The notes under the pieces were generated by a model. The model saw only the letters and a list, made by a program, of their open reading frames with translations. It ran no database searches and was not told the origin of the DNA. From Octopus sinensis (lineage: Eukaryota), in contig NC_043016.1 in the NCBI RefSeq assembly GCF_006345805.1, positions 13,888,001-13,952,000 of the forward strand: 64,000 bases of DNA, in the 5' to 3' direction. Each line of letters starts with the position of its first letter. Position 1 is the first letter of the stretch. The position numbers and the translations under genes are program-made. Positions 4,095 to 59,185 of this stretch are shown here, in pieces.

Positions 4095-4545
4095 AATATA
4101 GATGTATCATTACAACAGCCACTAATAAGCTGAAATACCCTTACAACAACCAGCACTGAGTTGTATCATTACAACTATTCTTTTCCTTTTCTGTTTTGTA
4201 GCAATTGATTTTCCTTATAAGTTTTTTTTAAAAATCATTAAATGTTTTAAAACTTTCTTTTTTGTCCTATTGGCTGTAGACCTTGGTGTAGACCCCTAGC
4301 CTGCCATCTCCTATCAAACCATCCAACCAATGACAGCATGGAAGATGAACATTAAACAATAATGATGATGATTTCAATATTTTTACATGTTACACTCTAT
4401 TTTCATTATATATATATATATTGAACGGTACTGTCCAGGTATCGAAACCATAGTGATATCTGTGGGGACAGCTGATGATGGAGGTGTGTTGGTTTGTTGG
4501 AAGGCTGTTATTATATGTGCAGAGTAGTTTTATAAAACATCCACT

Positions 4546-4589
<44 letters not shown>

Positions 4590-4593
<4 letters not shown>

Positions 4594-4850
4594 GCCGGTG
4601 GCACGTAAAAAGCACCATCCGATTGTGGCCGTTGCCAGCCTTGTCTAGCCTCCATGCCAGTGGCACGTAAAAAGCACCCACTACACTCACAGAGTGGTTG
4701 CATTAGGAAGGTCATCCAGCTGTAGAAACACTGCCAGATCAGACTGGGCCTGGTGCAGCCTTCGGGCTTCCCAGACCCTAGTCAAATCGTCCAACCCATG
4801 CTGGCATGGAAAGAAGACGTTAAACGATGATGATGATGATGATGATGATA
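4590..4850 (+). mobile_element. Abundant SINE-like family ending ccaacccatgctagcatggaaagcggacgttaaac(GAT)n (representative copy)
   Basis: Core ggttggcattaggaagggcatccagctgtagaaac. Other copies near 4970-5350(-), 14305-14640(-), 30300-30700, 30740-31380(-), 31688-31985(-), 46830-47240, 47725-48200, 52120-52305, 54650-54950, 58330-58640, 60065-60455. Confidence 0.85.
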
Positions 4851-4915: not shown

Positions 4916-5421
4916 ATATGGTATGTTGGTGCAAACAGGAAAAATAGAACTCAAAATATGAGTATATGTATCATCATCATCATCATCATCATCGTTTAAC
5001 ATCTGCTTTCCATTCTGGCATGGTTTGACAAAGGCTGCACCAGGCTTCAATCTAATCTGGCAAGGTTTCTACAGCTGAACGCCCTCCATAACACCAAACA
5101 CTCTGAGAGTGTAGTGGATATTTTTCATGTGCCACCGGCATGGGAGCCAGTTAGGCAGCACTGGCATCGACCATGCTCGAATGGTGCTTTTTACGTGCCA
5201 CCATCATGGACTCCAGTCAGATGGTACTGGTAACAGCCAAAACAATGATTTCTCTTGACTCAACAGGTCTTCTCAATCACAGCATATTGCCTGATGATTG
5301 AGGGGTACGGTTATGCGACACTGACCTAGGCCATGGCTACAGTCTTTATTGATATTAATATTTAGCAGAAGATTCTACTAAATATTAATAAGTATGTTTG
5401 TATATATATATATATATATAT

Positions 5422-5707: not shown

Positions 5708-5911
5708 ATATAGATAGATAGATAGATAGATAGATATATACATGGGGGCATCCAGCTGTTGAAACATTGCCATATCAAATTGGAGTCTGATGCAGCCACT
5801 GGCTCTCCAGATCTTAGTCAAACCGTCCAACCCATGCCAGCATGGAAAAGGATGTTAAACGATGATGATGACAGTGTTACCTCACAGTAAATGAGTTTAA
5901 TTCATTCCATG

Positions 5912-7222: not shown

Positions 7223-9371
7223 TACTGTCACTTTGCCAACACTGCCTTTATGTCACCCATAGAGATTGCCTTCTCCGCTACACTGTCCTCCTCTCGGGAA
7301 CCTGTCTCTTCCACCACATCCGAATGCTGCTTCTCCTGAAGCTGCAGGAGCTCATCTGTCATCAGCTCCCCTGAGTGTTCCTCGACAAGATCATTAATGT
7401 CCCCATCGTCAACCTCGAGGCCCATGGACTTGCCAAGAGGCACTATCTCCTCAACTATAGGTGTCTTAGACTCAAACTCCTCAAGGTCTCTTTCGGATGT
7501 GCAGTCAGGTCACAGTTTCATCCATGCAGAATTCAGCTTTCTCCGCATTACACTCTGCCAGGCCATATCGATGATCTTCAGGTAGATGACAATATCGTAG
7601 CATTCCTTCCAAAACCCACGAAGGGTTAGATTTGTATTTTCAGTGACTTCAAAGCACCGATGAAACAGGTGTTTGATGTACAATTTCTTAAAATTAGAAA
7701 TCACTTGTTGGTCCATGGGCTGCAAGGTAGGGGTGGTATGGCATGAAAGGGATAGAACTTTTGTGAATTTAAATTCATCCAGGATATCATCTTCAAAGTT
7801 AGGAAGGTGAGCAGGAACACTGTTGAGGATGACAAGGGCCTTGAGAGGAAGATCATTCTCCAGATGGTACTTTTTCACTGCTGGTCCAAAGATAAGGTTG
7901 ACCCACATGGTCAAGAATTGCCTAGTAACCCAGGCTTTAATGTTTGCCCTCCTCCACGTAATCTGTAGCTTCTCCTTCAGGATTTTGTGCGACTTGGACA
8001 TTCATGGGTTTTTCGAATGATAGACAAGAAGCAGCTTAATCTTCAAGTCTCCACTTGCATTGGCACAAAGGGTGACAGTTAGCCTTTTATAGGCTTGTGG
8101 TTTGGCATTTTCTTCTCCTTTGCAGTTATGTAGGCTCTTCAGGGCATTTTTTTTCCAAAAAAGGTCAGTTTCTTCACAGTTGAATTTGTGTTGTGTGATG
8201 TACCCCTCAGCTGTGATGAGCTGACAGAATTCACACACAAAATCTTCACTTGCCTTCATGTCAGAACTCGCTGCTTCTCTATTCCTGACAATGCTATGAA
8301 CACCAGTCCTCTTGAAATTATCAAACCAGCCACAACTAGCCTTAACCCTTTCATTACTGTATTTATTTTGAGATGCTCTGTGTTTCTTTCAGTCATTTTA
8401 AATATAACAAAGAATTTTGTAAAATAACTTAGTTAACATTAAGCTAGTGTTAGGAGCATTAATTGTGACTAAGGCTTCGTGGAAGATTTTAATTCAAAAC
8501 TTAAGAAAACAAGACATTTTACCACAGAGCCAGAGCCAGTTTTGGCTGGGTTAGTAACAAAAAGGTTAAATGTGTCTGCTGATGTCTCCTCTGTCAATGT
8601 TCCAGAGTTCTATTTCAGGAGATCCCCATACAGTGCTTGTGCTTTCTCGCAGATGATGGTCTCCATAATCATATCCCCTGTGAGTTGCTTCTTGTCGATC
8701 TACAGGAGAAGCAATTTTTCCATCTCTTTGTGGACAGATGTGTGTTGCTTAGAGAGCCTTTGTAGTTGTAATGGCCTTGGTTTCATCCTTTCTCTTCAAG
8801 ATGGTGCAGATCGTTGACGCGTTTTAGTCGTATTGATGTGCTATGTCCACTACATGCATTCCTCTCTCATGTTTAGCAATGATTTCTTTCTTTAATTCTA
8901 TCATAATCAGCTTTTTCTTCTTCTCAGCATTGTCCTTTGAACTAACCTTCTTAGGGCCCATGGCTGACACAACTAATTATTATACAATAATAGCAAAAAA
9001 ACACGCTAAAAAAAAACCACTGGAAAAAGCACAGTGGGGATGCTGCCACAATGAGATAAACATGTGAACTGAGCAAGCAGAGGCTGCACTTGTTGGGAGA
9101 GCATGTGTGAGGTCAGTGCTGACCAGTGGTAACATGTATGAAACTTTCTCATACTATGGATTTCCACTTCTACTTCAGGACAAAATTTTGCACAAGCCTC
9201 GGCTCATACAGCAAATTATTTGTATAATAGTGCACTCGTACTGCGAGGTTCTACTGTGTGTATATATATATATCTATATATATATATATATATCTATCTA
9301 TATATATATATATATATATATACATACATACATACATACATACATACATACATACATACATACATACAACA

Positions 9372-17468: not shown

Positions 17469-18746
17469 TTGGGTTGTCCAGAAAGTTTGTGCTGGTTTAT
17501 AGTAGCTTACCTTTCAACTTATTTTATAACATGGTTGAGTCCATAAAATAGGATTTGACTACACCTCCATTTAGAGCACAATTTAAGCTATCTTTTCGTG
17601 GAAGAAGGTTTATGTTCCTATAACCTGTGTTAATTCTGTAACCCTTTAAAATGGATGATAAGAAAGTTCATTTTCAGCACTTGATGCTTTTCTTTTTCCG
17701 TAAAGGGAAAAATGCCTCACAAGCAACCAAAGAAATATGCGCAGCTCACGGTGGTGTTTTTTTTATCCAAACGAACTGTACGGAAGTGGTTCGCAAGGTT
17801 CTGAGCTGGAGATTGTAGCCTTATTGATAAAGAGTGATCAGGCAGACCATCCACCACAGATGATGACCAAATCAAGTCATTATTTGAGAATAACCCACAT
17901 TGCACAACCCAAGAATTGGCAGAAAGCCTCACCCTATCAAAATCCATCATTCATGAGCACCTGGTAAAGTTTGGGTATACAAATTGCTACGATGTTTGGG
18001 TACCACATGAGTTGAGTGAGAAGAACCTTTTGGATCGCATCTCCATCTGTGATTCGCTTTATAAATAGAATGAAAACACACTTTTTTTAAAGCAAATTGT
18101 GACAGGTGATGAGAAATGGATTATCTACTGAAATGTTCAGAGAAAGCGATCCTTGAGTAAGCGACATGAGCCACTTTTAGCCACTCCAAAAGCAGGTCTT
18201 CACCCTAAAAAAGTCTTGATTTGTGTCTGGTGGGATTGGAAAGGAATTCTGTACTATGAGCTTCTCCCAAGTAACCAGACAATTAATTCTGAGCAACACT
18301 GCATGCAACTGGATGAGTTAAAAGCAGCAATTCAAGAGAAACGTCCAGAATTGGCCAACAGAAAGGGTGTTGTTTTCCAACATGATAATGCAAGACCGCA
18401 TGTTTCTTTGGGAACCAGACAAAGATTGCTGCAGCTTGGCTGGGATGTGTTACCCCACCCTCCATATTCACCAGATATTGCTCCTTCGGATTCTCCCTTA
18501 TTCAGGTCTCTGCAGAATAGTCTTAATGGTAAAAATTTCAATTCCTTGGATGACGTAAAAAGATACCTTGATGAATTCTTTGACACACCTCAATTCTGAG
18601 AAGAGGGTATTTTCAAGTTAAAGGAAAGATGGAGATGCATTGTGCAACAAAATGGTTCATATTTGGTTGATTAAAAATGTAATGGCAAGTATTTATTGAC
18701 TTTTTCTTTCCTTTAAAAGTCAGCACGCACTTTCTGGACAACCCAA
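17469..18746 (+). mobile_element. Mariner (D,D34D) transposon, full length, inactivated
   Basis: TIRs ttgggttgtccagaaagt..gtgctg / cagcac..actttctggacaacccaa with TA TSDs. Transposase from ATG 17651 with WVPHEL, TGDEKW, HDNARPH and YSPDIAPSD motifs, broken by stops and frameshifts. Confidence 0.95.
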
Positions 18747-21990: not shown

Positions 21991-22491
21991 AAATCTCTGA
22001 ACGAGGTATAAACAGTAACTGCACGACAATGTGAGGTATACTTGCCATCTCAAAATGGCTAACCACTAAGGGTGGGTGTTACTGTAGCTTGTAGCCCCAG
22101 GAGAACATCGTCTCCTACCCCTAACCCTACCTCACATTGTTGTGCAGTTACTCTTTATATCTTGTTCAGAGATTTATTATTGCTTGCATACAGTTTTTCG
22201 AGATCAGTGACGAAAAGTTACTGGAAAAACCATATAAGGATTTGCATTGGAACACCTTTTCATCGAAAACCGGTGATTGTCGTACACTGATGACAGGTCA
22301 ATACCTAGAAACTGCAGTCCGTGCGTATCACTTAGGTTGACGAGGGAGGGGTGACCTCCCTTTGCAAATACCATAAGGGTACAGAAAGTGTGTCTAAAGC
22401 CAGCTGGAGACGATGTTCTCCTGGGGCTACAAGCCACAGTAACACCCACCCTTAGTGGTTAGCCATATTGAGATGGCAAGTATACCTCACA
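21991..22491 (+). mobile_element. Hammerhead-containing 355-nt element with inverted copy of its own head-tail junction (retrozyme-like or PLE pLTR)
   Basis: Monomer 22128-22482 bounded by direct tacctcaca. 22030-22115 is the reverse complement of 22406-22491 (84/86). 21991-22038 is the reverse complement of 22128-22175 (44/48). Confidence 0.75.
22273..22331 (+). ncRNA. Type I hammerhead ribozyme
   Basis: GUGAU-ugu-CGUACA-CUGAUGA-C-AGGU[caau]ACCU-A-GAAA-CUGCAG-UC|CGUGCG-U-AUCAC. GUC triplet, palindromic helix III ACUGCAGU, two point mismatches (C.A at 10.1/11.1, A.C at helix I base). Confidence 0.8.
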
Positions 22492-23008
22492 AAAAAAAAA
22501 CAACATTAAGCAGAAATCATTGATAAAGAAAAATAGTCTTTGACATGTGAAAAGCACCCACTACACCACTTGGAGTGGTTGTTATTAGGAAAGGCATTTA
22601 TCCATAGAAACCATGCTGAATCAGCAAAGTGTAGCTCTCTAGCTGAGCTGTCTAACTCATGCCAGCGTGGAAAGTAGATGCCAAATGATGATGATGATGA
22701 TGATGATGGATACATTTCATTTTGTTCTAATGTTAAATGACCAAACATAAAATTCCACATGAGTTATTTACTGTGAATATTTTCATGATTCAGGAAGGTG
22801 ACTACAATTCATGGAATGTTAATATTCACACATAACTGAAAGGTTTTGGAATAGTGTGATTGTGTGGTTAGTAGCTTGCTTCTCAACCACGTGATTCTGA
22901 GTTCAGTCCCACTGCATGGCATCTTGGGCAAGTGACTTCTACTATAGCCTCAGGCAGACCAAAGCGTTGTGAGTGGATCTGGTAAATGGAAACTGAAAGA
23001 AGCCCATC

Positions 23009-23424: not shown

Positions 23425-24995
23425 TAAGATCGATTTGTTCAACTAAAACCATTTAAGAAAGTACCCCAGCATGGCCACAGTCCAATGACTGAAACAAGTA
23501 AAAGATAAAAGATATACTGGGATTGATTTGTTCAAGTAAAACCCTTCAAGGTAGTGCCCCAGCATGGCCACAGTCCAATGAGTGAAACAAGTAAAAGATA
23601 AAAGATATACTGGGATTGATTTGTTCAAGTAAAACCCTTCAAGGTGGTGCCCCAGCATGGCCACAGTCCACTGACTGAAACAAGTAAAAGATAAAAGATA
23701 TACTGGGATTGATTTGTTCAACTAAAACCCTTCAAGGTGGTGCCCCAGCATGGCCACAGTCCAATGACTGAAACAAGTAAAAGATAAAAGATATACTGGG
23801 ATTGATTTGTTCAAGTAAAACCCTTCAAGGTGGTGCCCCAGCATGGCCACAGTCCAATGACTGAAACAAGTAAAAGATAAAAGATATACTGGGATTGATT
23901 TGTTCAACTAAAACCCTTCAAGTTGGTGCCCCAGCATGACCACAGTCCAATGACTGAAACAAGTAAAAGATAAAAGATATACTGGGATTGATTTGTTCAA
24001 GTAAAACCCTTCAAGGTGGTGCCCCAGCATGGCCACAGTCCAATGACTGAAACAAGTAAAAGATAAAAGATATACTGGGATTGATTTGTTCAAGTAAAAC
24101 CCTTCAAGGTGGTGCCCCAGCATGGCCGCAGACCAATGACTGAAACAAGTAAAAGATAAAAGATATACTGGGATTGATTTGTTCAACTAAAACCCTTCAA
24201 GGTGGTGCCCCAGCATGGCCACAGTCCAATGACTGAAACAAGTAAAAGATAAAAGATATACTGGGATTGATTGTTCAACTAAAACCCTTCAGGTGGTGGC
24301 CCCAGCATGGCTACAGTCCAATGACTGAAACAAGTAAAAGATAAAAGATATACTGGGATGATTTGTTCAACTAAAACCCTTCAAGGTGGTGCCCCAGCAT
24401 GGCCACAGTCCAATGACTGAAACAAGTAAAAGATAAAAGATATACTGGGATTGATTTGTTCAAGTAAAACCCTTCAAGGTGGTGCCCCAGCATGGCCATA
24501 GTCCAATGACTGAAACAAGTAAAAGATAAAAGATATACTGGGATTGATTTGTTCAACTAAAACCCTTCAAGGTGGTGCCCCAGCATGGCCACAGTCCACT
24601 GACTGAAACAAGTAAAAGATAAAAGATATACTGGGATTGATTTGTTCAACTAAAACCCTTCAAGGTGGTGCCCCAGCATGGCCACAGTCCAATGACTGAA
24701 ACAAGTAAAAGATAAAAGATATACTGGGATTGATTTGTTCAAGTAAAACCCTTCAAGGTGGTGCCCCAGCATGGCCACAGTCCAATGACTGAAACAAGTA
24801 AAAGATAAAAGATATACTGGGATTGATTTGTTCAACTAAAACCCTTCAAGGTGGTGCCCCAGCATGGCCACAGTCCAATGACTGAAACAAGTAAAAGATA
24901 AAAGATATACTAGGATTGATTTGTTCAAATAAAACCCTTCAAGGTGGTGCCCCAGCATGGCCACAGTCCAAGAGTGAAACAAGTAAAAGATAGAA
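23425..24995 (+). repeat. 93-bp tandem array (17 copies) made of a SINE 3' tail
   Basis: Unit gggattgatttgttcaa(g/c)taaaacccttcaaggtggtgccccagcatggccacagtccaatgactgaaacaagtaaaagataaaagatatact, continuous with the SINE body at 22845-23420. Confidence 0.95.
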
Positions 24996-45795: not shown

Positions 45796-46680
45796 TATGC
45801 TGATGACCTTTATGCTGATGACCTCTATGCTGATGACCTTGCTTTAAAAGTCGAGTCACTGCCAGAACTAAATACGAAGTTTAGGGTGTGGAAGCAAGGT
45901 CTAGAATCAAAGGACCTTAGGGTTAACCTAGAAAAAACCAAAGTCTTAGTAAGTAAGAAGGCTGACAAATCACAACCCACTTCAGGTAGATGGCCCTGCT
46001 CAATCTGTACAAAAGGCATGGATAGAAACTCCATATGATGTTCACAGTGCAAGCTATGGACACATAAGAGATGCAGCAATATCAAAGGAAGGCTAAATGG
46101 GAAGATAGATTTTGTGTATAGCAGATGCAATAAACACTGAAGATGTACAAAAAATAGATTCCATAACATGCCAGGGGGATAAACTAGAAGTAGCTGATAG
46201 CTTCTGCTACCTAGGTGATCAAGTCTGTGGATGCTCTGAGAGTGTAGTAACTAGAGTAAGAATAGCCTGGACAAAGTTCAGGGAGCTCCTACCTCTGCTG
46301 GCAACTAAGGTCCTCTCGCTCAGGATGAAAGATAGATTGTATGATGCATGTGTGTGAACTACCATGCTACATGGCAGTGAAACATGAGCCATGACTGTTG
46401 AGGACATGTGTAGGCTTGAAAGAAATGAAGCTAGCATGATCCACAGGAGGTGTAATGTCAGTGTGCACACATGACAGAGTGTGAACACTCTGAGAGATAA
46501 GTTGGACATAAGAAGCATCAAATGTGGTGTGCAAGAGAGATGGCTGCACTGGTATGATCATGTGTTACAAACGGATGAAGACAGCTGTGTGAGGAAGTGG
46601 CACACCTTAACTGTGGATGGAACCTGAGGAAGAGGTAAACCCAGGAAGACATGTTGGGCTTCTCAGAGGCAATGACAGGA
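45796..46680 (+). mobile_element. 5'-truncated RTE-clade LINE
   Basis: YADDL..L..KF..WKQGLESK.LRVNL.KTKVL, KLEVADSFCYLGDQV, AW.KFRELLPLL, YDACV..MLHGSET motifs with stops. Confidence 0.9.
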
Positions 46681-58128: not shown

Positions 58129-58697
58129 AAAGAGAAAGTTCTTGGTACAGTATTATAAATTTGAAAAAAAATGAGTAGAGATGGCATTTGTTGGATAATT
58201 TTTATTTCAGTAATGATGTCTACAAAGAGTGACTCTGGTATGAGTTTCTAGCTTCAAAATAAAAATAAAAATTATCCCCAAAAGAACATCTCTACTCATT
58301 TTTTCAAATATATATATATATGTATGTATGTGGGCACGTAAAAAGCACCATCCATTCGTAGCCGTTGCCAGCCTCACCTGGCCCCCATACCGGTGGCACA
58401 TAAAAAGCACCATCCGATCATGGCCGTTTGCCAGACTCGTCTGGCACCTGTGCCGGTGGCACGTAAAAAGTACCCACTACACTCATGGAGTGGTTGGCGT
58501 TAGGAAGGGCATCCAGCCGTAGAAACATTGCCAGATCAAACTGGGCCTGGTGCAGCCATCTGGCTTCCCAGACCCCAGTTGAACCGTCCAACCCATGCTA
58601 GCATGGAAGTGGATGCTAAACGATGATGATGATGATGATGATATATATGCATGCATATGTATATATGTTTATGTGTGTGTATATATATATATGTTTA

Positions 58698-58930: not shown

Positions 58931-59185
58931 TACAAAGTCTAGACAGATATCTTCAGCTAGCAGGCCTTGCTACTCTAGACTGATGATGGGCAAGACCCAG
59001 AAACATGCATGTCTCTAGATGCAGGCCTAGCTGTTGGGGGTGTTTGTCTCCCCTTCGTAAATATATAAGGACACAGGAAATGTGTCAAGGCCAACAGGAA
59101 GCGTCGATGCTTCCTAGGGCTAAATAGCAGTGGTGTAATTCCCTTTATGGGACTGTCACGTTAAGTTGACAGTATACAACCACTA
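58931..59185 (+). mobile_element. Hammerhead-containing structured non-coding element between (TA)n tracts (retrozyme-like)
   Basis: HHR followed by stacked hairpins. About 70% similar by eye over about 80 nt to 22356-22429, with conserved pairing. Confidence 0.7.
58954..59033 (+). ncRNA. Type I hammerhead ribozyme, apparently intact
   Basis: CAGCUAG..GCC-U-UGC..UCUAGA-CUGAUGA-UGGG[caaga]CCCA-GAAA-CAUGCAUG-UC|UCUAGA-U-GCA-GGC-CUAGCUG. All core nucleotides present; GUC cleavage after 59013. Confidence 0.9.

What the first reader, a model, noticed from the sequence alone, without database searches (positions are those of the whole stretch)
22332..22491. Covarying secondary structure shared by the 22-kb and 59-kb elements defines one diverged RNA family
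Seen: downstream of their HHRs both elements share, in order, a G/C hairpin, AAAUA..AUAAGG, hairpin GGUACA[GAAAG]UGUGUC vs GACACA[GGAAA]UGUGUC, nested stem GCC..GGAGA/UCUCC..GGC vs GCC..AGGAAGC/GCUUCCU..GGC ending GGGCUA, hairpin CCAC[ccuua]GUGG vs UCCC[uuuau]GGGA, hairpin GCCA[uauugaga]UGGC vs CUGUCA[cguuaagu]UGACAG, then GUAUAC. Identity is about 70% by eye over 22356-22429 / 59048-59122 and lower elsewhere, yet pairing is retained. The HHR helices also differ in sequence but keep palindromic helices I and III. Inference: selection acts on RNA structure beyond the ribozyme (RT recruitment, circularisation or promoter signal). I know of no description of this motif in cephalopods, but I cannot search.
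Basis: partly seen in the sequence, partly recalled or inferred. Interest (0 to 1): 0.88.

Follow-up and report, generated by a model that had tools for sequence, protein, structure and literature searches.

The report
Hammerhead retroelement 3' module, two copies
Two diverged copies of a short, ribozyme-carrying retrotransposon of the Penelope-like or retrozyme kind share a roughly 160-base hairpin-rich tail that probably tells the reverse transcriptase where to start; this is a known kind of element, and two copies are too few to prove covariation.

Summary
Each follows the only two hammerhead-descriptor matches in the window (0.025 expected). Hairpins 1, 3, 4 and 6 form at homologous columns in both copies; hairpin 5 is one column out of register.

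The shared fold is better than column-shuffled alignments (z -5.2) and neutral-divergence simulations (z -4.0 and -4.6). With substitution positions held fixed the excess disappears (z -1.15; p 0.12-0.27). So stems are depleted in substitutions, but compensatory change is not significant (3 double changes in 28 pairs, n=2).

No further copy was found in the window, in metagenome, viral or prokaryote collections, or in Rfam.

The anatomy is that of a Penelope-like insertion. The 22-kb locus has an inverted 5'-truncated copy, a 39-nt tail, one ORF-less 355-nt permuted unit and A-rich flanks. The 59-kb copy sits in (TA)n. Both end in AC-rich sequence 170-172 nt after the ribozyme cut, which resembles the internal initiation site mapped in an Anolis element.

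Best reading: this is the 3' recognition and initiation module of a non-autonomous, hammerhead-bearing retroelement. It is a new member of a known kind, of modest interest.

The parts
21991..22115 (-). Inverted, 5'-truncated copy of the 22-kb element. It comprises the last 86 nt of the module (22030-22115) plus a 39-nt 3' 'tail' (21991-22029).
   Evidence: Inverted repeat 22030-22115 / 22406-22491 is 98% complementary. The whole stretch aligns to the permuted direct copy (module end followed by 22137-22175) with 6 mismatches in about 125.
22116..22127 (+). 12-nt filler (tacccctaaccc) at the junction of the inverted and direct copies.
   Evidence: Read directly from the sequence. It matches neither copy.
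22128..22491 (+). Direct copy: one ORF-less 355-nt unit plus a 9-nt terminal redundancy (tacctcaca at both ends). It starts with the tail (22137-22175).
   Evidence: The inverted copy shows that ...GTATACCTCACA runs straight on into TTGT(C/T)GTGCAGTTACT..., so the start of the direct copy continues its end. Only short stop-limited ORFs are present. GC is 0.43.
22272..22331 (+). Type-I hammerhead of the 22-kb element. Helix I 5' strand ends at 22286; CUGAUGA 22287-22293; helix II 22294-22307 (AGGU/ACCU); GAAA 22308-22311; palindromic helix III CUGCAG 22312-22317; U-C 22318-22319. Predicted cut is after 22319. Helix I 3' strand is 22320-22331.
   Evidence: Descriptor scan. No Rfam hit.
22332..22491 (+). 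The finding: the structured module of the 22-kb copy.
- H1: 22342-22349 / 22355-22362
- Linker AAAUA..AUAAGG: 22366-22378
- H3: 22378-22383 / 22389-22394
- H4 outer: 22398-22401 / 22425-22428
- H4 inner: 22406-22410 / 22417-22421
- H5: 22446-22449 / 22455-22458
- H6: 22462-22465 / 22474-22477
- GUAUAC: 22480-22485
- AC-rich end CCUCACA: 22485-22491
58931..59183 (+). The 59-kb copy, bounded on both sides by (TA)n microsatellite. The 3' edge is ambiguous by about 2 nt because it runs into TA repeats.
   Evidence: The 48 nt upstream of its ribozyme show no similarity to the rest of the 22-kb unit.
58974..59019 (+). Type-I hammerhead of the 59-kb copy. Helix I UCUAGA 58974-58979; CUGAUGA 58980-58986; helix II 58987-58999 (UGGG/CCCA); GAAA 59000-59003; palindromic helix III CAUGCAUG 59004-59011; U-C 59012-59013. 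Predicted cut is after 59013. Helix I 3' strand UCUAGA is 59014-59019.
   Evidence: No Rfam hit.
59020..59183 (+). Structured module of the 59-kb copy.
- H1: 59036-59040 / 59049-59053
- H3: 59070-59075 / 59081-59086
- H4 outer: 59089-59092 / 59118-59121
- H4 inner: 59096-59102 / 59109-59115
- H5: 59140-59143 / 59149-59152
- H6: 59153-59158 / 59167-59172
- GUAUAC: 59172-59177
- AC-rich end ACAACCAC: 59176-59183

Best explanation
Both loci are insertions of short retroelements that carry a sense-strand type-I hammerhead. They belong to the Penelope-like element (PLE) / animal non-LTR retrozyme kind. The shared roughly 160 nt after the ribozyme is the 3'-terminal cis module of the transposition RNA.

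Shown here:
- The two modules are homologous.
- Their stems carry fewer substitutions than their linkers.
- Both copies end at the same homologous point, in AC-rich sequence, 172 nt and about 170 nt after the predicted ribozyme cut.
- The 22-kb locus has the composite architecture typical of PLE insertions: an inverted 5'-truncated copy abutting the direct copy, a 39-nt tail at one outer end only, a permuted unit-length direct copy, and an A-rich target. The 59-kb copy lies in (TA)n.

Inferred:
- A PLE reverse transcriptase supplied in trans binds this folded module.
- It starts cDNA synthesis internally, at either of two sites 39 nt apart. One site follows ...CCUCACA and the other is at the end of the tail. 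This explains why copies end there and why the tail is optional.
- The module is therefore kept by selection on the active master copies, not on the inserted copies.
- The 22-kb unit has no ORF, so it is non-autonomous. Its template was an uncleaved multimer or a religated circle, because the copy contains an intact ribozyme and spans exactly one unit.
For: Homology: score 30 against 8.5±1.3; 69.7% over the core.

Ribozymes: only two matches in the window, at these two loci, against 0.025 expected.

Constraint on the fold:
- Alifold -31.2 against -12.8±3.5 for column shuffles, with structure conservation index (SCI) 0.57 against 0.31.
- Neutral-divergence simulations give z -4.0 and -4.6, 0 of 400 each.
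- Cross-prediction of hairpins gives p about 0.002-0.004.
- 96% of cells are paired, against 28-53% for slid controls.

PLE-type anatomy:
- Inverted repeat, 98%.
- Inverted copy continues 39 nt past the end of the direct copy, and the same 39 nt open the direct copy.
- (TA)n on both sides of the 59-kb copy.
- A-rich flanks at the 22-kb locus.

Literature:
- Inverted 5'-truncated copies, 30-40-bp tails, hammerheads in pLTRs and AT-rich or (TA)n targets are PLE hallmarks (PMC8557442).
- In the Anolis PLE, the RNA needed for insertion extends about 146 nt past the ribozyme cut (first 172 nt of the ORF, cut at +26). RT starts internally in an AC-rich stem-loop, and the tail is the stretch between two start sites (PMC11167929).
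- Non-autonomous PLEs share their 3' ends with autonomous partners (PMC8557442).
- Animal retrozymes derive from PLE pLTRs (bioRxiv 10.64898/2026.07.22.740005).
- Octopus vulgaris has recently active Penelope families (PMC13282606).

Age: the inverted and direct copies differ by only about 5%. The 22-kb copy has therefore changed little since insertion, so most of its roughly 38% difference from the 59-kb copy probably separates two lineages that were each able to retrotranspose. No equivalent clock exists for the 59-kb copy.
Against: - Only two independent sequences exist, and compensatory change is not significant once substitution positions are fixed. A sequence-specific rather than structure-specific signal fits equally well.
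- No PLE reverse transcriptase or GIY-YIG ORF is in the window, so the partner is assumed.
- The distance from cut to 3' end (about 170 nt) is about twice that in the Anolis element (about 85-92 nt).
- The AC-rich stem-loop at the 22-kb end is not more stable than shuffles (z -0.3 to -0.9).
- Folding does not favour the + strand. Orientation rests on the ribozyme and the 3' ends.
- Neither ribozyme reaches any Rfam hammerhead model, even at E up to 10. The 22-kb copy has a C·A mismatch in place of a Watson-Crick closing pair at the base of helix II.
- Neither locus is a tandem array.
Confidence: 0.6

Rival explanations
1. The module is a retrozyme circular-RNA scaffold. The hairpins are kept because the ribozyme-cleaved, ligated monomer must be a compact, self-paired circle, for stability, ligation or blocking of re-cleavage. 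They are not kept for RT recognition.
For: - The unit length of 355 nt and GC of 0.43 fit animal non-LTR retrozymes: 150-450 bp, low GC (below 45-50%), highly self-paired circles (PMC7229834).
- The direct copy spans exactly one permuted unit plus 9 nt, as expected from copying a circle.
- The unit folded as a circle has z -3.4 against shuffles.
Against: - In the circular fold about half of the module's paired bases pair outside the module, and hairpin 1 is lost. Yet the rest of the unit is not conserved in the 59-kb copy at all.
- Neither locus is a tandem array, and each has a single ribozyme.
- This reading does not explain why both copies end at the same AC-rich point, nor the optional 39-nt tail.
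Confidence: 0.18
2. There is no selection on structure. The two copies share ancestry, the ancestral sequence happened to contain hairpins, and the better-conserved block is a primary-sequence signal (for a protein, or an internal promoter acting on DNA) or a mutational cold spot.
For: - With substitution positions fixed, neither the consensus energy (z -1.15) nor pair retention (p 0.12-0.27) exceeds chance.
- 19 of 28 pairs never vary.
- The minus strand folds with the same z-scores.
- PLE pLTRs are reported to hold an internal promoter (cited in PMC8557442).
Against: - Three or four double changes (A-U to G-C, G-C to A-U, C-G to U-A) and four wobble-compatible single changes fall in stems. 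There are only two breaks, both in helix 1 (pairs 1 and 7 of 8), and none in the other helices.
- Slid controls give 0-1 double changes.
- The inner stem of H4 differs in length and sequence between the copies (5 bp against 7 bp) yet is kept between invariant anchors.
Confidence: 0.17
3. The region is the decayed 5' coding end of a Penelope-like ORF, as in Anolis where the ORF starts inside the ribozyme. On this reading the conservation is protein-coding.
For: In the Anolis element the ORF begins in the ribozyme (PMC11167929). The 59-kb copy has a 40-codon ORF starting in helix III.
Against: - The two copies differ by indels of 1, 1 and 2 nt within the best-conserved 80 nt, so no reading frame is shared.
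- The 22-kb copy has stops in the corresponding frames.
- The 22-kb unit closes on itself after 355 nt with no ORF.
- The 81-aa antisense ORF has no homologue.
Confidence: 0.03

Closest known systems
Pseudo-LTR / 3' end of Penelope-like elements (Penelope/Poseidon, Neptune, Hydra clades), including the RNA segment mapped in the Anolis carolinensis Poseidon element (PMC11167929; PMC8557442; PMC4209133)
   Same: - Sense-strand type-I hammerhead with a short palindromic helix III.
- A required or conserved RNA segment directly downstream of it.
- Copies that end inside that segment in AC-rich sequence.
- An optional 30-40-nt tail (39 nt here).
- An inverted 5'-truncated copy abutting the direct copy.
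- AT-rich or (TA)n targets.
   Different: - No RT/GIY-YIG ORF; the 22-kb unit is only 355 nt.
- The cut-to-end distance is about 170 nt, against about 85-92 nt in Anolis.
- No sequence comparison with any catalogued PLE could be made, because Repbase and Dfam are not available.
Animal non-LTR retrozymes (Cervera & de la Peña 2020, PMC7229834; Li, Clavereau & Pollet 2026 preprint)
   Same: A non-coding unit of a few hundred nt with one type-I hammerhead, low GC, a predicted self-paired fold, and derivation from PLE pLTRs. Dispersed monomer copies are described.
   Different: They are defined by tandem arrays and circular-RNA expression. Here each locus has one ribozyme and about one unit, and expression is unknown. 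No retrozyme from a cephalopod is described in the papers searched.
SINE/LINE 3'-tail sharing (stringent LINEs recognising a 3' stem-loop that their SINEs copy). Recalled from general knowledge, not tested.
   Same: It works alike: unrelated bodies share a structured 3' module that recruits the partner's reverse transcriptase. The two copies here share only the ribozyme and the module, not the rest.
   Different: The enzyme class differs. There is a ribozyme. Initiation is internal and not at a 3' poly(A) or microsatellite tail. No tRNA, 5S or 7SL head is present.

Membership tests
Hammerhead ribozyme, type I (metazoan form with short palindromic helix III) | Catalytic core CUGANGA ... GAAA with a cleavage triplet (U-H) and helices I, II and III in type-I order | tested here: met
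   Both loci match a full descriptor: 2 matches against 0.025 expected, and 0 of 200 random windows had two or more. Both use GUC. Helix II is 4 bp. Helix III is the palindrome CUGCAG or CAUGCAUG.
Hammerhead ribozyme, type I (metazoan form with short palindromic helix III) | Match to a curated Rfam hammerhead covariance model | tested here: not met
   No hammerhead family was reported at gathering score or at E up to 10 in the two local searches.
Hammerhead ribozyme, type I (metazoan form with short palindromic helix III) | Self-cleavage (as monomer or dimer) | not testable with these tools
   This needs in vitro transcription of monomer and dimer constructs.
Penelope-like element insertion | Single ORF with telomerase-like RT and GIY-YIG endonuclease | tested here: not met
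   There is no long ORF in or next to either element. No GIY..YIG motif occurs in any frame of the window, and the only YxDD match is a LINE-like fragment at 45.8 kb. Pfam hits are mariner and pogo only. The elements can therefore be at most non-autonomous derivatives.
Penelope-like element insertion | Inverted 5'-truncated copy adjacent to the 5' end of the direct copy | tested here: met
   21991-22115(-) against the direct copy: 98% over 86 nt and about 95% over 125 nt. This applies to the 22-kb locus only.
Penelope-like element insertion | [quoted passage not shown] | tested here: met
   A 39-nt extension lies at the outer end of the inverted copy (21991-22029). It is absent from the 3' end of the direct copy and present at the 5' start of the direct copy.
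Penelope-like element insertion | Partial tandem (pLTR) organisation | tested here: inconclusive
   The direct copy is 1.0 unit plus 9 nt. This shows a permuted or tandem template but is not itself a partial tandem.
Penelope-like element insertion | AT-rich or (TA)n target | tested here: met
   The 59-kb copy lies inside (TA)n. The 22-kb composite lies between A-rich runs. The target-site duplication cannot be resolved in low-complexity sequence.
Animal non-LTR retrozyme | Short non-coding monomer (about 150-450 bp), low GC, one type-I hammerhead per unit | tested here: met
   The unit is 355 nt with GC 0.43 and one ribozyme. This holds for the 22-kb element. The unit length of the 59-kb element is unknown.
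Animal non-LTR retrozyme | Head-to-tail tandem array with at least two ribozymes | tested here: not met
   There is one ribozyme per locus and no tandem repeat at either locus.
Animal non-LTR retrozyme | Expression as circular RNA | not testable with these tools
   No transcriptome data are available here.
   Only two independent sequences exist. There are 3 double changes in 28 pairs, and the controls are not significant once substitution positions are fixed. No further members were found.

The most novel reading that the evidence does not exclude
The module is a discrete, conserved RNA fold: four or five hairpins, and possibly a pseudoknot between the invariant AUAAGG and the loop of hairpin 5. 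It would serve as the binding and internal-initiation platform for a cephalopod Penelope-like reverse transcriptase and would be shared by otherwise unrelated non-autonomous elements. That would make it the first structural (covariance-model) definition of a PLE 3' recognition element, and a handle for tracing which autonomous PLE drives which retrozyme.
Probability: 0.35. Interest if true: 0.5.

Novelty: new member of a known kind. Interest (0 to 1): 0.3.

Why it matters
How Penelope-like elements choose their template and start reverse transcription is known from a single in vitro study of one lizard element. If the hairpin module seen here proves to be conserved by covariation across a mollusc family, it would give a sequence-and-structure signature for that step. 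It would link ORF-less ribozyme elements to their autonomous partners. It would also help annotate a class of repeats that generic pipelines tend to leave as 'unknown' or 'unclassified SINE' in repeat-rich cephalopod genomes. As it stands, the finding is a well-formed example of a known element type, not a new kind of RNA.

Tried and rejected
- **Rfam.** No family reached gathering score in the whole window. Local E≤10 searches gave only chance microRNA and snoRNA hits and no hammerhead.
- **More copies in the window.** blastn at word size 7 found none. A covariance model built from the two copies and run with filters off found only the two copies and the inverted partial copy. The next hit, 4544-4652(-) at 15.9 bits, is a TA-repeat artefact.
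- **More copies elsewhere.**
  - Two metagenome pattern scans gave 0 hits.
  - The prokaryote genome scan gave 3 hits and the viral scans gave 1 and 28. All are chance matches: the model matches only the 25-nt pattern itself, in 2 of the 32 loci.
- **Reaching cephalopod DNA through spurious or transposon ORFs.**
  - The 81-aa antisense ORF over the element has no homologue.
  - The pogo ORF is not on record.
  - The mariner ORF finds only hits of about 78% identity or less, mostly from unrelated metagenomes. The host genome could not be sampled this way.
- **tRNA-derived SINE head.** None found.
- **Coding explanation.** Rejected because of frame-breaking indels and stops.
- **Strand from folding energy.** Uninformative.
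- **Repeat library in a paper's supplement.** Not held.
- **Pfam scan of all stop-free fragments.** Prepared but not run. A motif scan for GIY-YIG and YxDD was used instead.

Full report
**What is there**

The stretch 22332-22491 and its counterpart 59020-59183 are homologous. A local alignment scores 30, against 8.5±1.3 (maximum 14-15) for shuffled sequence and for 1,500 random windows of the same genome piece. It is about 45% over the ribozyme and over the 3' third. Standard blastn scoring missed the match.

Each module directly follows a type-I hammerhead. I scanned both strands of the window with a full descriptor: CUGANGA, a closed helix II, GAAA, a closed helix III, U-H, and at least 5 of 6 bp in helix I. 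It matches only at 22287 and 58980. First-order Markov windows give 0.025 matches on average and never two.

Both ribozymes have a 4-bp helix II, a GUC cleavage triplet and a short helix III that is a palindrome (CUGCAG, CAUGCAUG). This is the metazoan form thought to act as a dimer (PMC4209133). Rfam reports no hammerhead, even at E up to 10.

**The hairpins and the covariation claim**

- On the MAFFT alignment, 28 pairs in six helices have 96.4% of cells paired.
- Sliding the 3' partners by 1-3 columns drops this to 28-53%.
- Hairpin 5 is one column out of register between the copies and shares only two pairs.

Three tests support a shared, constrained fold:
- The consensus energy is -31.2 kcal/mol, against -12.8±3.5 for column shuffles that keep the conservation pattern (z -5.2, 0 of 500). 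The structure conservation index is 0.57 against 0.31.
- Simulated neutral descendants with the same number and kinds of substitutions at random positions give z -4.0 and -4.6, 0 of 400 each.
- Local hairpins predicted from one copy alone are kept in the other at 79-83%, against 55-56% expected (p about 0.002-0.004).

The signal lies in where the substitutions fall, not in what they are.
- Only 13 of 58 paired columns differ, against 45 of 94 unpaired ungapped columns.
- With positions fixed and base identities randomised, the consensus energy is unremarkable (z -1.15, 78 of 500).
- Pair retention is also not significant under that control (p 0.12-0.27).
- There are 3 double changes, 4 wobble-compatible single changes, 19 invariant pairs, and 2 breaks, both within helix 1.

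Two sequences cannot separate constraint on pairing from constraint on sequence. 'Covarying' is therefore suggestive and not shown.

**No further members could be obtained**

A covariance model built from the two copies and run over the window with filters off finds only the two copies and an inverted partial copy. The next hit is a TA-repeat artefact. Pattern scans of metagenome, viral and prokaryote collections gave nothing real. Attempts to reach cephalopod assemblies through ORFs also failed.

**Anatomy of the loci**

The 22-kb locus is a composite, read left to right:
- An A-rich flank.
- An inverted, 5'-truncated copy (22115 down to 21991). Its first 86 nt are 98% identical to 22406-22491, and it then continues for 39 nt (TTGTCGTGCAGTTACTGTTTATACCTCGTTCAGAGATTT).
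- A 12-nt filler.
- A direct copy, 22128-22491. It begins with TACCTCACA plus the same 39 nt and ends with TACCTCACA.
- An A-rich flank.

The inverted copy aligns to 'end of direct copy followed by start of direct copy' with 6 mismatches in about 125. The element is therefore a 355-nt unit read from a tandem or circular template. The direct copy is one unit plus 9 nt. It has no ORF, and its GC is 0.43.

The 59-kb copy (about 253 nt) lies between (TA)n tracts. It shares only the ribozyme and the module with the 22-kb unit; the 48 nt upstream of its ribozyme are unrelated.

Both + strand copies end at the homologous point, just after the conserved GUAUAC, in AC-rich sequence (CCUCACA; AACCAC). 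These ends lie 172 nt and about 170 nt after the predicted cuts.

**How it most likely works**

These features are the published hallmarks of Penelope-like element insertions:
- hammerhead in the terminal repeat;
- inverted 5'-truncated copy at the 5' side;
- a 30-40-bp tail at one end only;
- AT-rich or (TA)n targets (PMC8557442).

For the one element studied in vitro (Anolis), three points are relevant (PMC11167929):
- The RNA needed for insertion runs from the ribozyme region to about 146 nt past the cut.
- Reverse transcription starts internally, in an AC-rich stem-loop.
- The tail is the stretch between two start sites.

The module here occupies the same position. It ends in AC-rich sequence, and the two ends seen at the 22-kb locus are 39 nt apart. 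I therefore read it as the 3' recognition and initiation module of a non-autonomous element mobilised in trans by a Penelope-like reverse transcriptase. Non-autonomous PLEs that share 3' ends with autonomous ones are described, and so are retrozymes derived from PLE pLTRs.

The inverted and direct copies differ by only about 5%, so the 22-kb copy has changed little since insertion. No such clock exists for the 59-kb copy. Most of the roughly 38% difference between the two modules therefore probably separates two lineages that were each able to retrotranspose. That is why depletion of substitutions in the stems is meaningful.

The steps 'RT binds the fold' and 'starts at these two sites' are inferred. 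No RT/GIY-YIG ORF is in the window. The AC-rich stem-loop is not unusually stable. Strand preference cannot be read from folding.

**Rivals**

- *Circular-RNA scaffold.* This fits the unit size and the permuted copy (PMC7229834). It does not explain the common 3' ends or the tail. It also relies on pairings with parts of the unit that the 59-kb copy lacks.
- *Sequence-only or DNA-level signal.* The statistics cannot exclude this.
- *Coding explanation.* Frame-breaking indels and stops exclude it.

**Comparison and novelty**

By mechanism and architecture this belongs with Penelope-like pLTR ends and animal non-LTR retrozymes. It is not an autonomous PLE, because it has no ORF. It does not meet the tandem-array criterion for retrozymes in this window.

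None of the papers I could search describes hammerheads or retrozymes in cephalopods. Octopus vulgaris is, however, reported to have dozens of recently active Penelope families and hundreds of unclassified SINE families. Whether this family is already in Dfam or Repbase could not be checked.

I rate it a new member of a known kind, with interest 0.3. The most novel reading still open is a definable, covarying RT-recognition fold for PLEs, at probability about 0.35.

Noticed in passing
window 22116-22127: The 12-nt filler between the inverted and direct copies reads tacccctaaccc. It contains CCCTAACCC, about 1.5 units of the reverse complement of the TTAGGG telomere repeat. This is curious because Penelope-like reverse transcriptases are telomerase relatives, and endonuclease-lacking PLEs carry reverse-complement telomeric repeats next to their hammerheads (PMC8557442). 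It may be chance.
   Followed up: no
window 22372-22378 with 22450-22454; 59064-59068 with 59144-59148: The invariant single-stranded AUAAGG is complementary to the loop of hairpin 5 in both copies (UAAGG:CCUUA in one, AUAAG:UUUAU in the other). This could be a pseudoknot or an alternative long-range helix. The MFE fold of the 22-kb copy uses it in place of hairpin 5.
   Followed up: partly
window 58974-58979/59014-59019 and 22281-22286/22320-22325: Helix I of the ribozyme is itself a palindrome in the 59-kb copy (UCUAGA on both strands) and a near-palindrome in the 22-kb copy (CGUACA/CGUGCG), in addition to the palindromic helix III. Two palindromic helices would allow several intermolecular pairings between ribozyme copies.
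   Followed up: no
window 4983-5011(-), 5843-5871(+), 22669-22697(+), 58604-58632(+): A separate short interspersed family ends ...TGGAAnnnGATGCyAAAyGAT followed by a (GAT)n tail. There are four copies within 3 mismatches against 0 expected. Two of them lie within 300 nt of the two hammerhead elements.
   Followed up: partly
window 7510-8001(-) and 18153-18599(+): These are transposase remnants: a pogo-type DDE_1 ORF (E 3e-18) and a mariner Transposase_1 ORF (E 1e-22). The closest database relatives of the mariner ORF are at most about 78% identical and come mostly from metagenome assemblies, with some from insects and a bat.
   Followed up: partly
window 45796-45900(+): A LINE-type reverse-transcriptase fragment (…YADDLALKVESLPELNTKFRVWKQGLESKDLRVNL) has its 15-bp YADDL-coding segment triplicated in tandem.
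   Followed up: no
window 23428-24000: A 93-bp tandem repeat, at least 6.2 copies at 96% identity, starts about 940 nt downstream of the 22-kb element and reaches the end of the stretch scanned.
   Followed up: no
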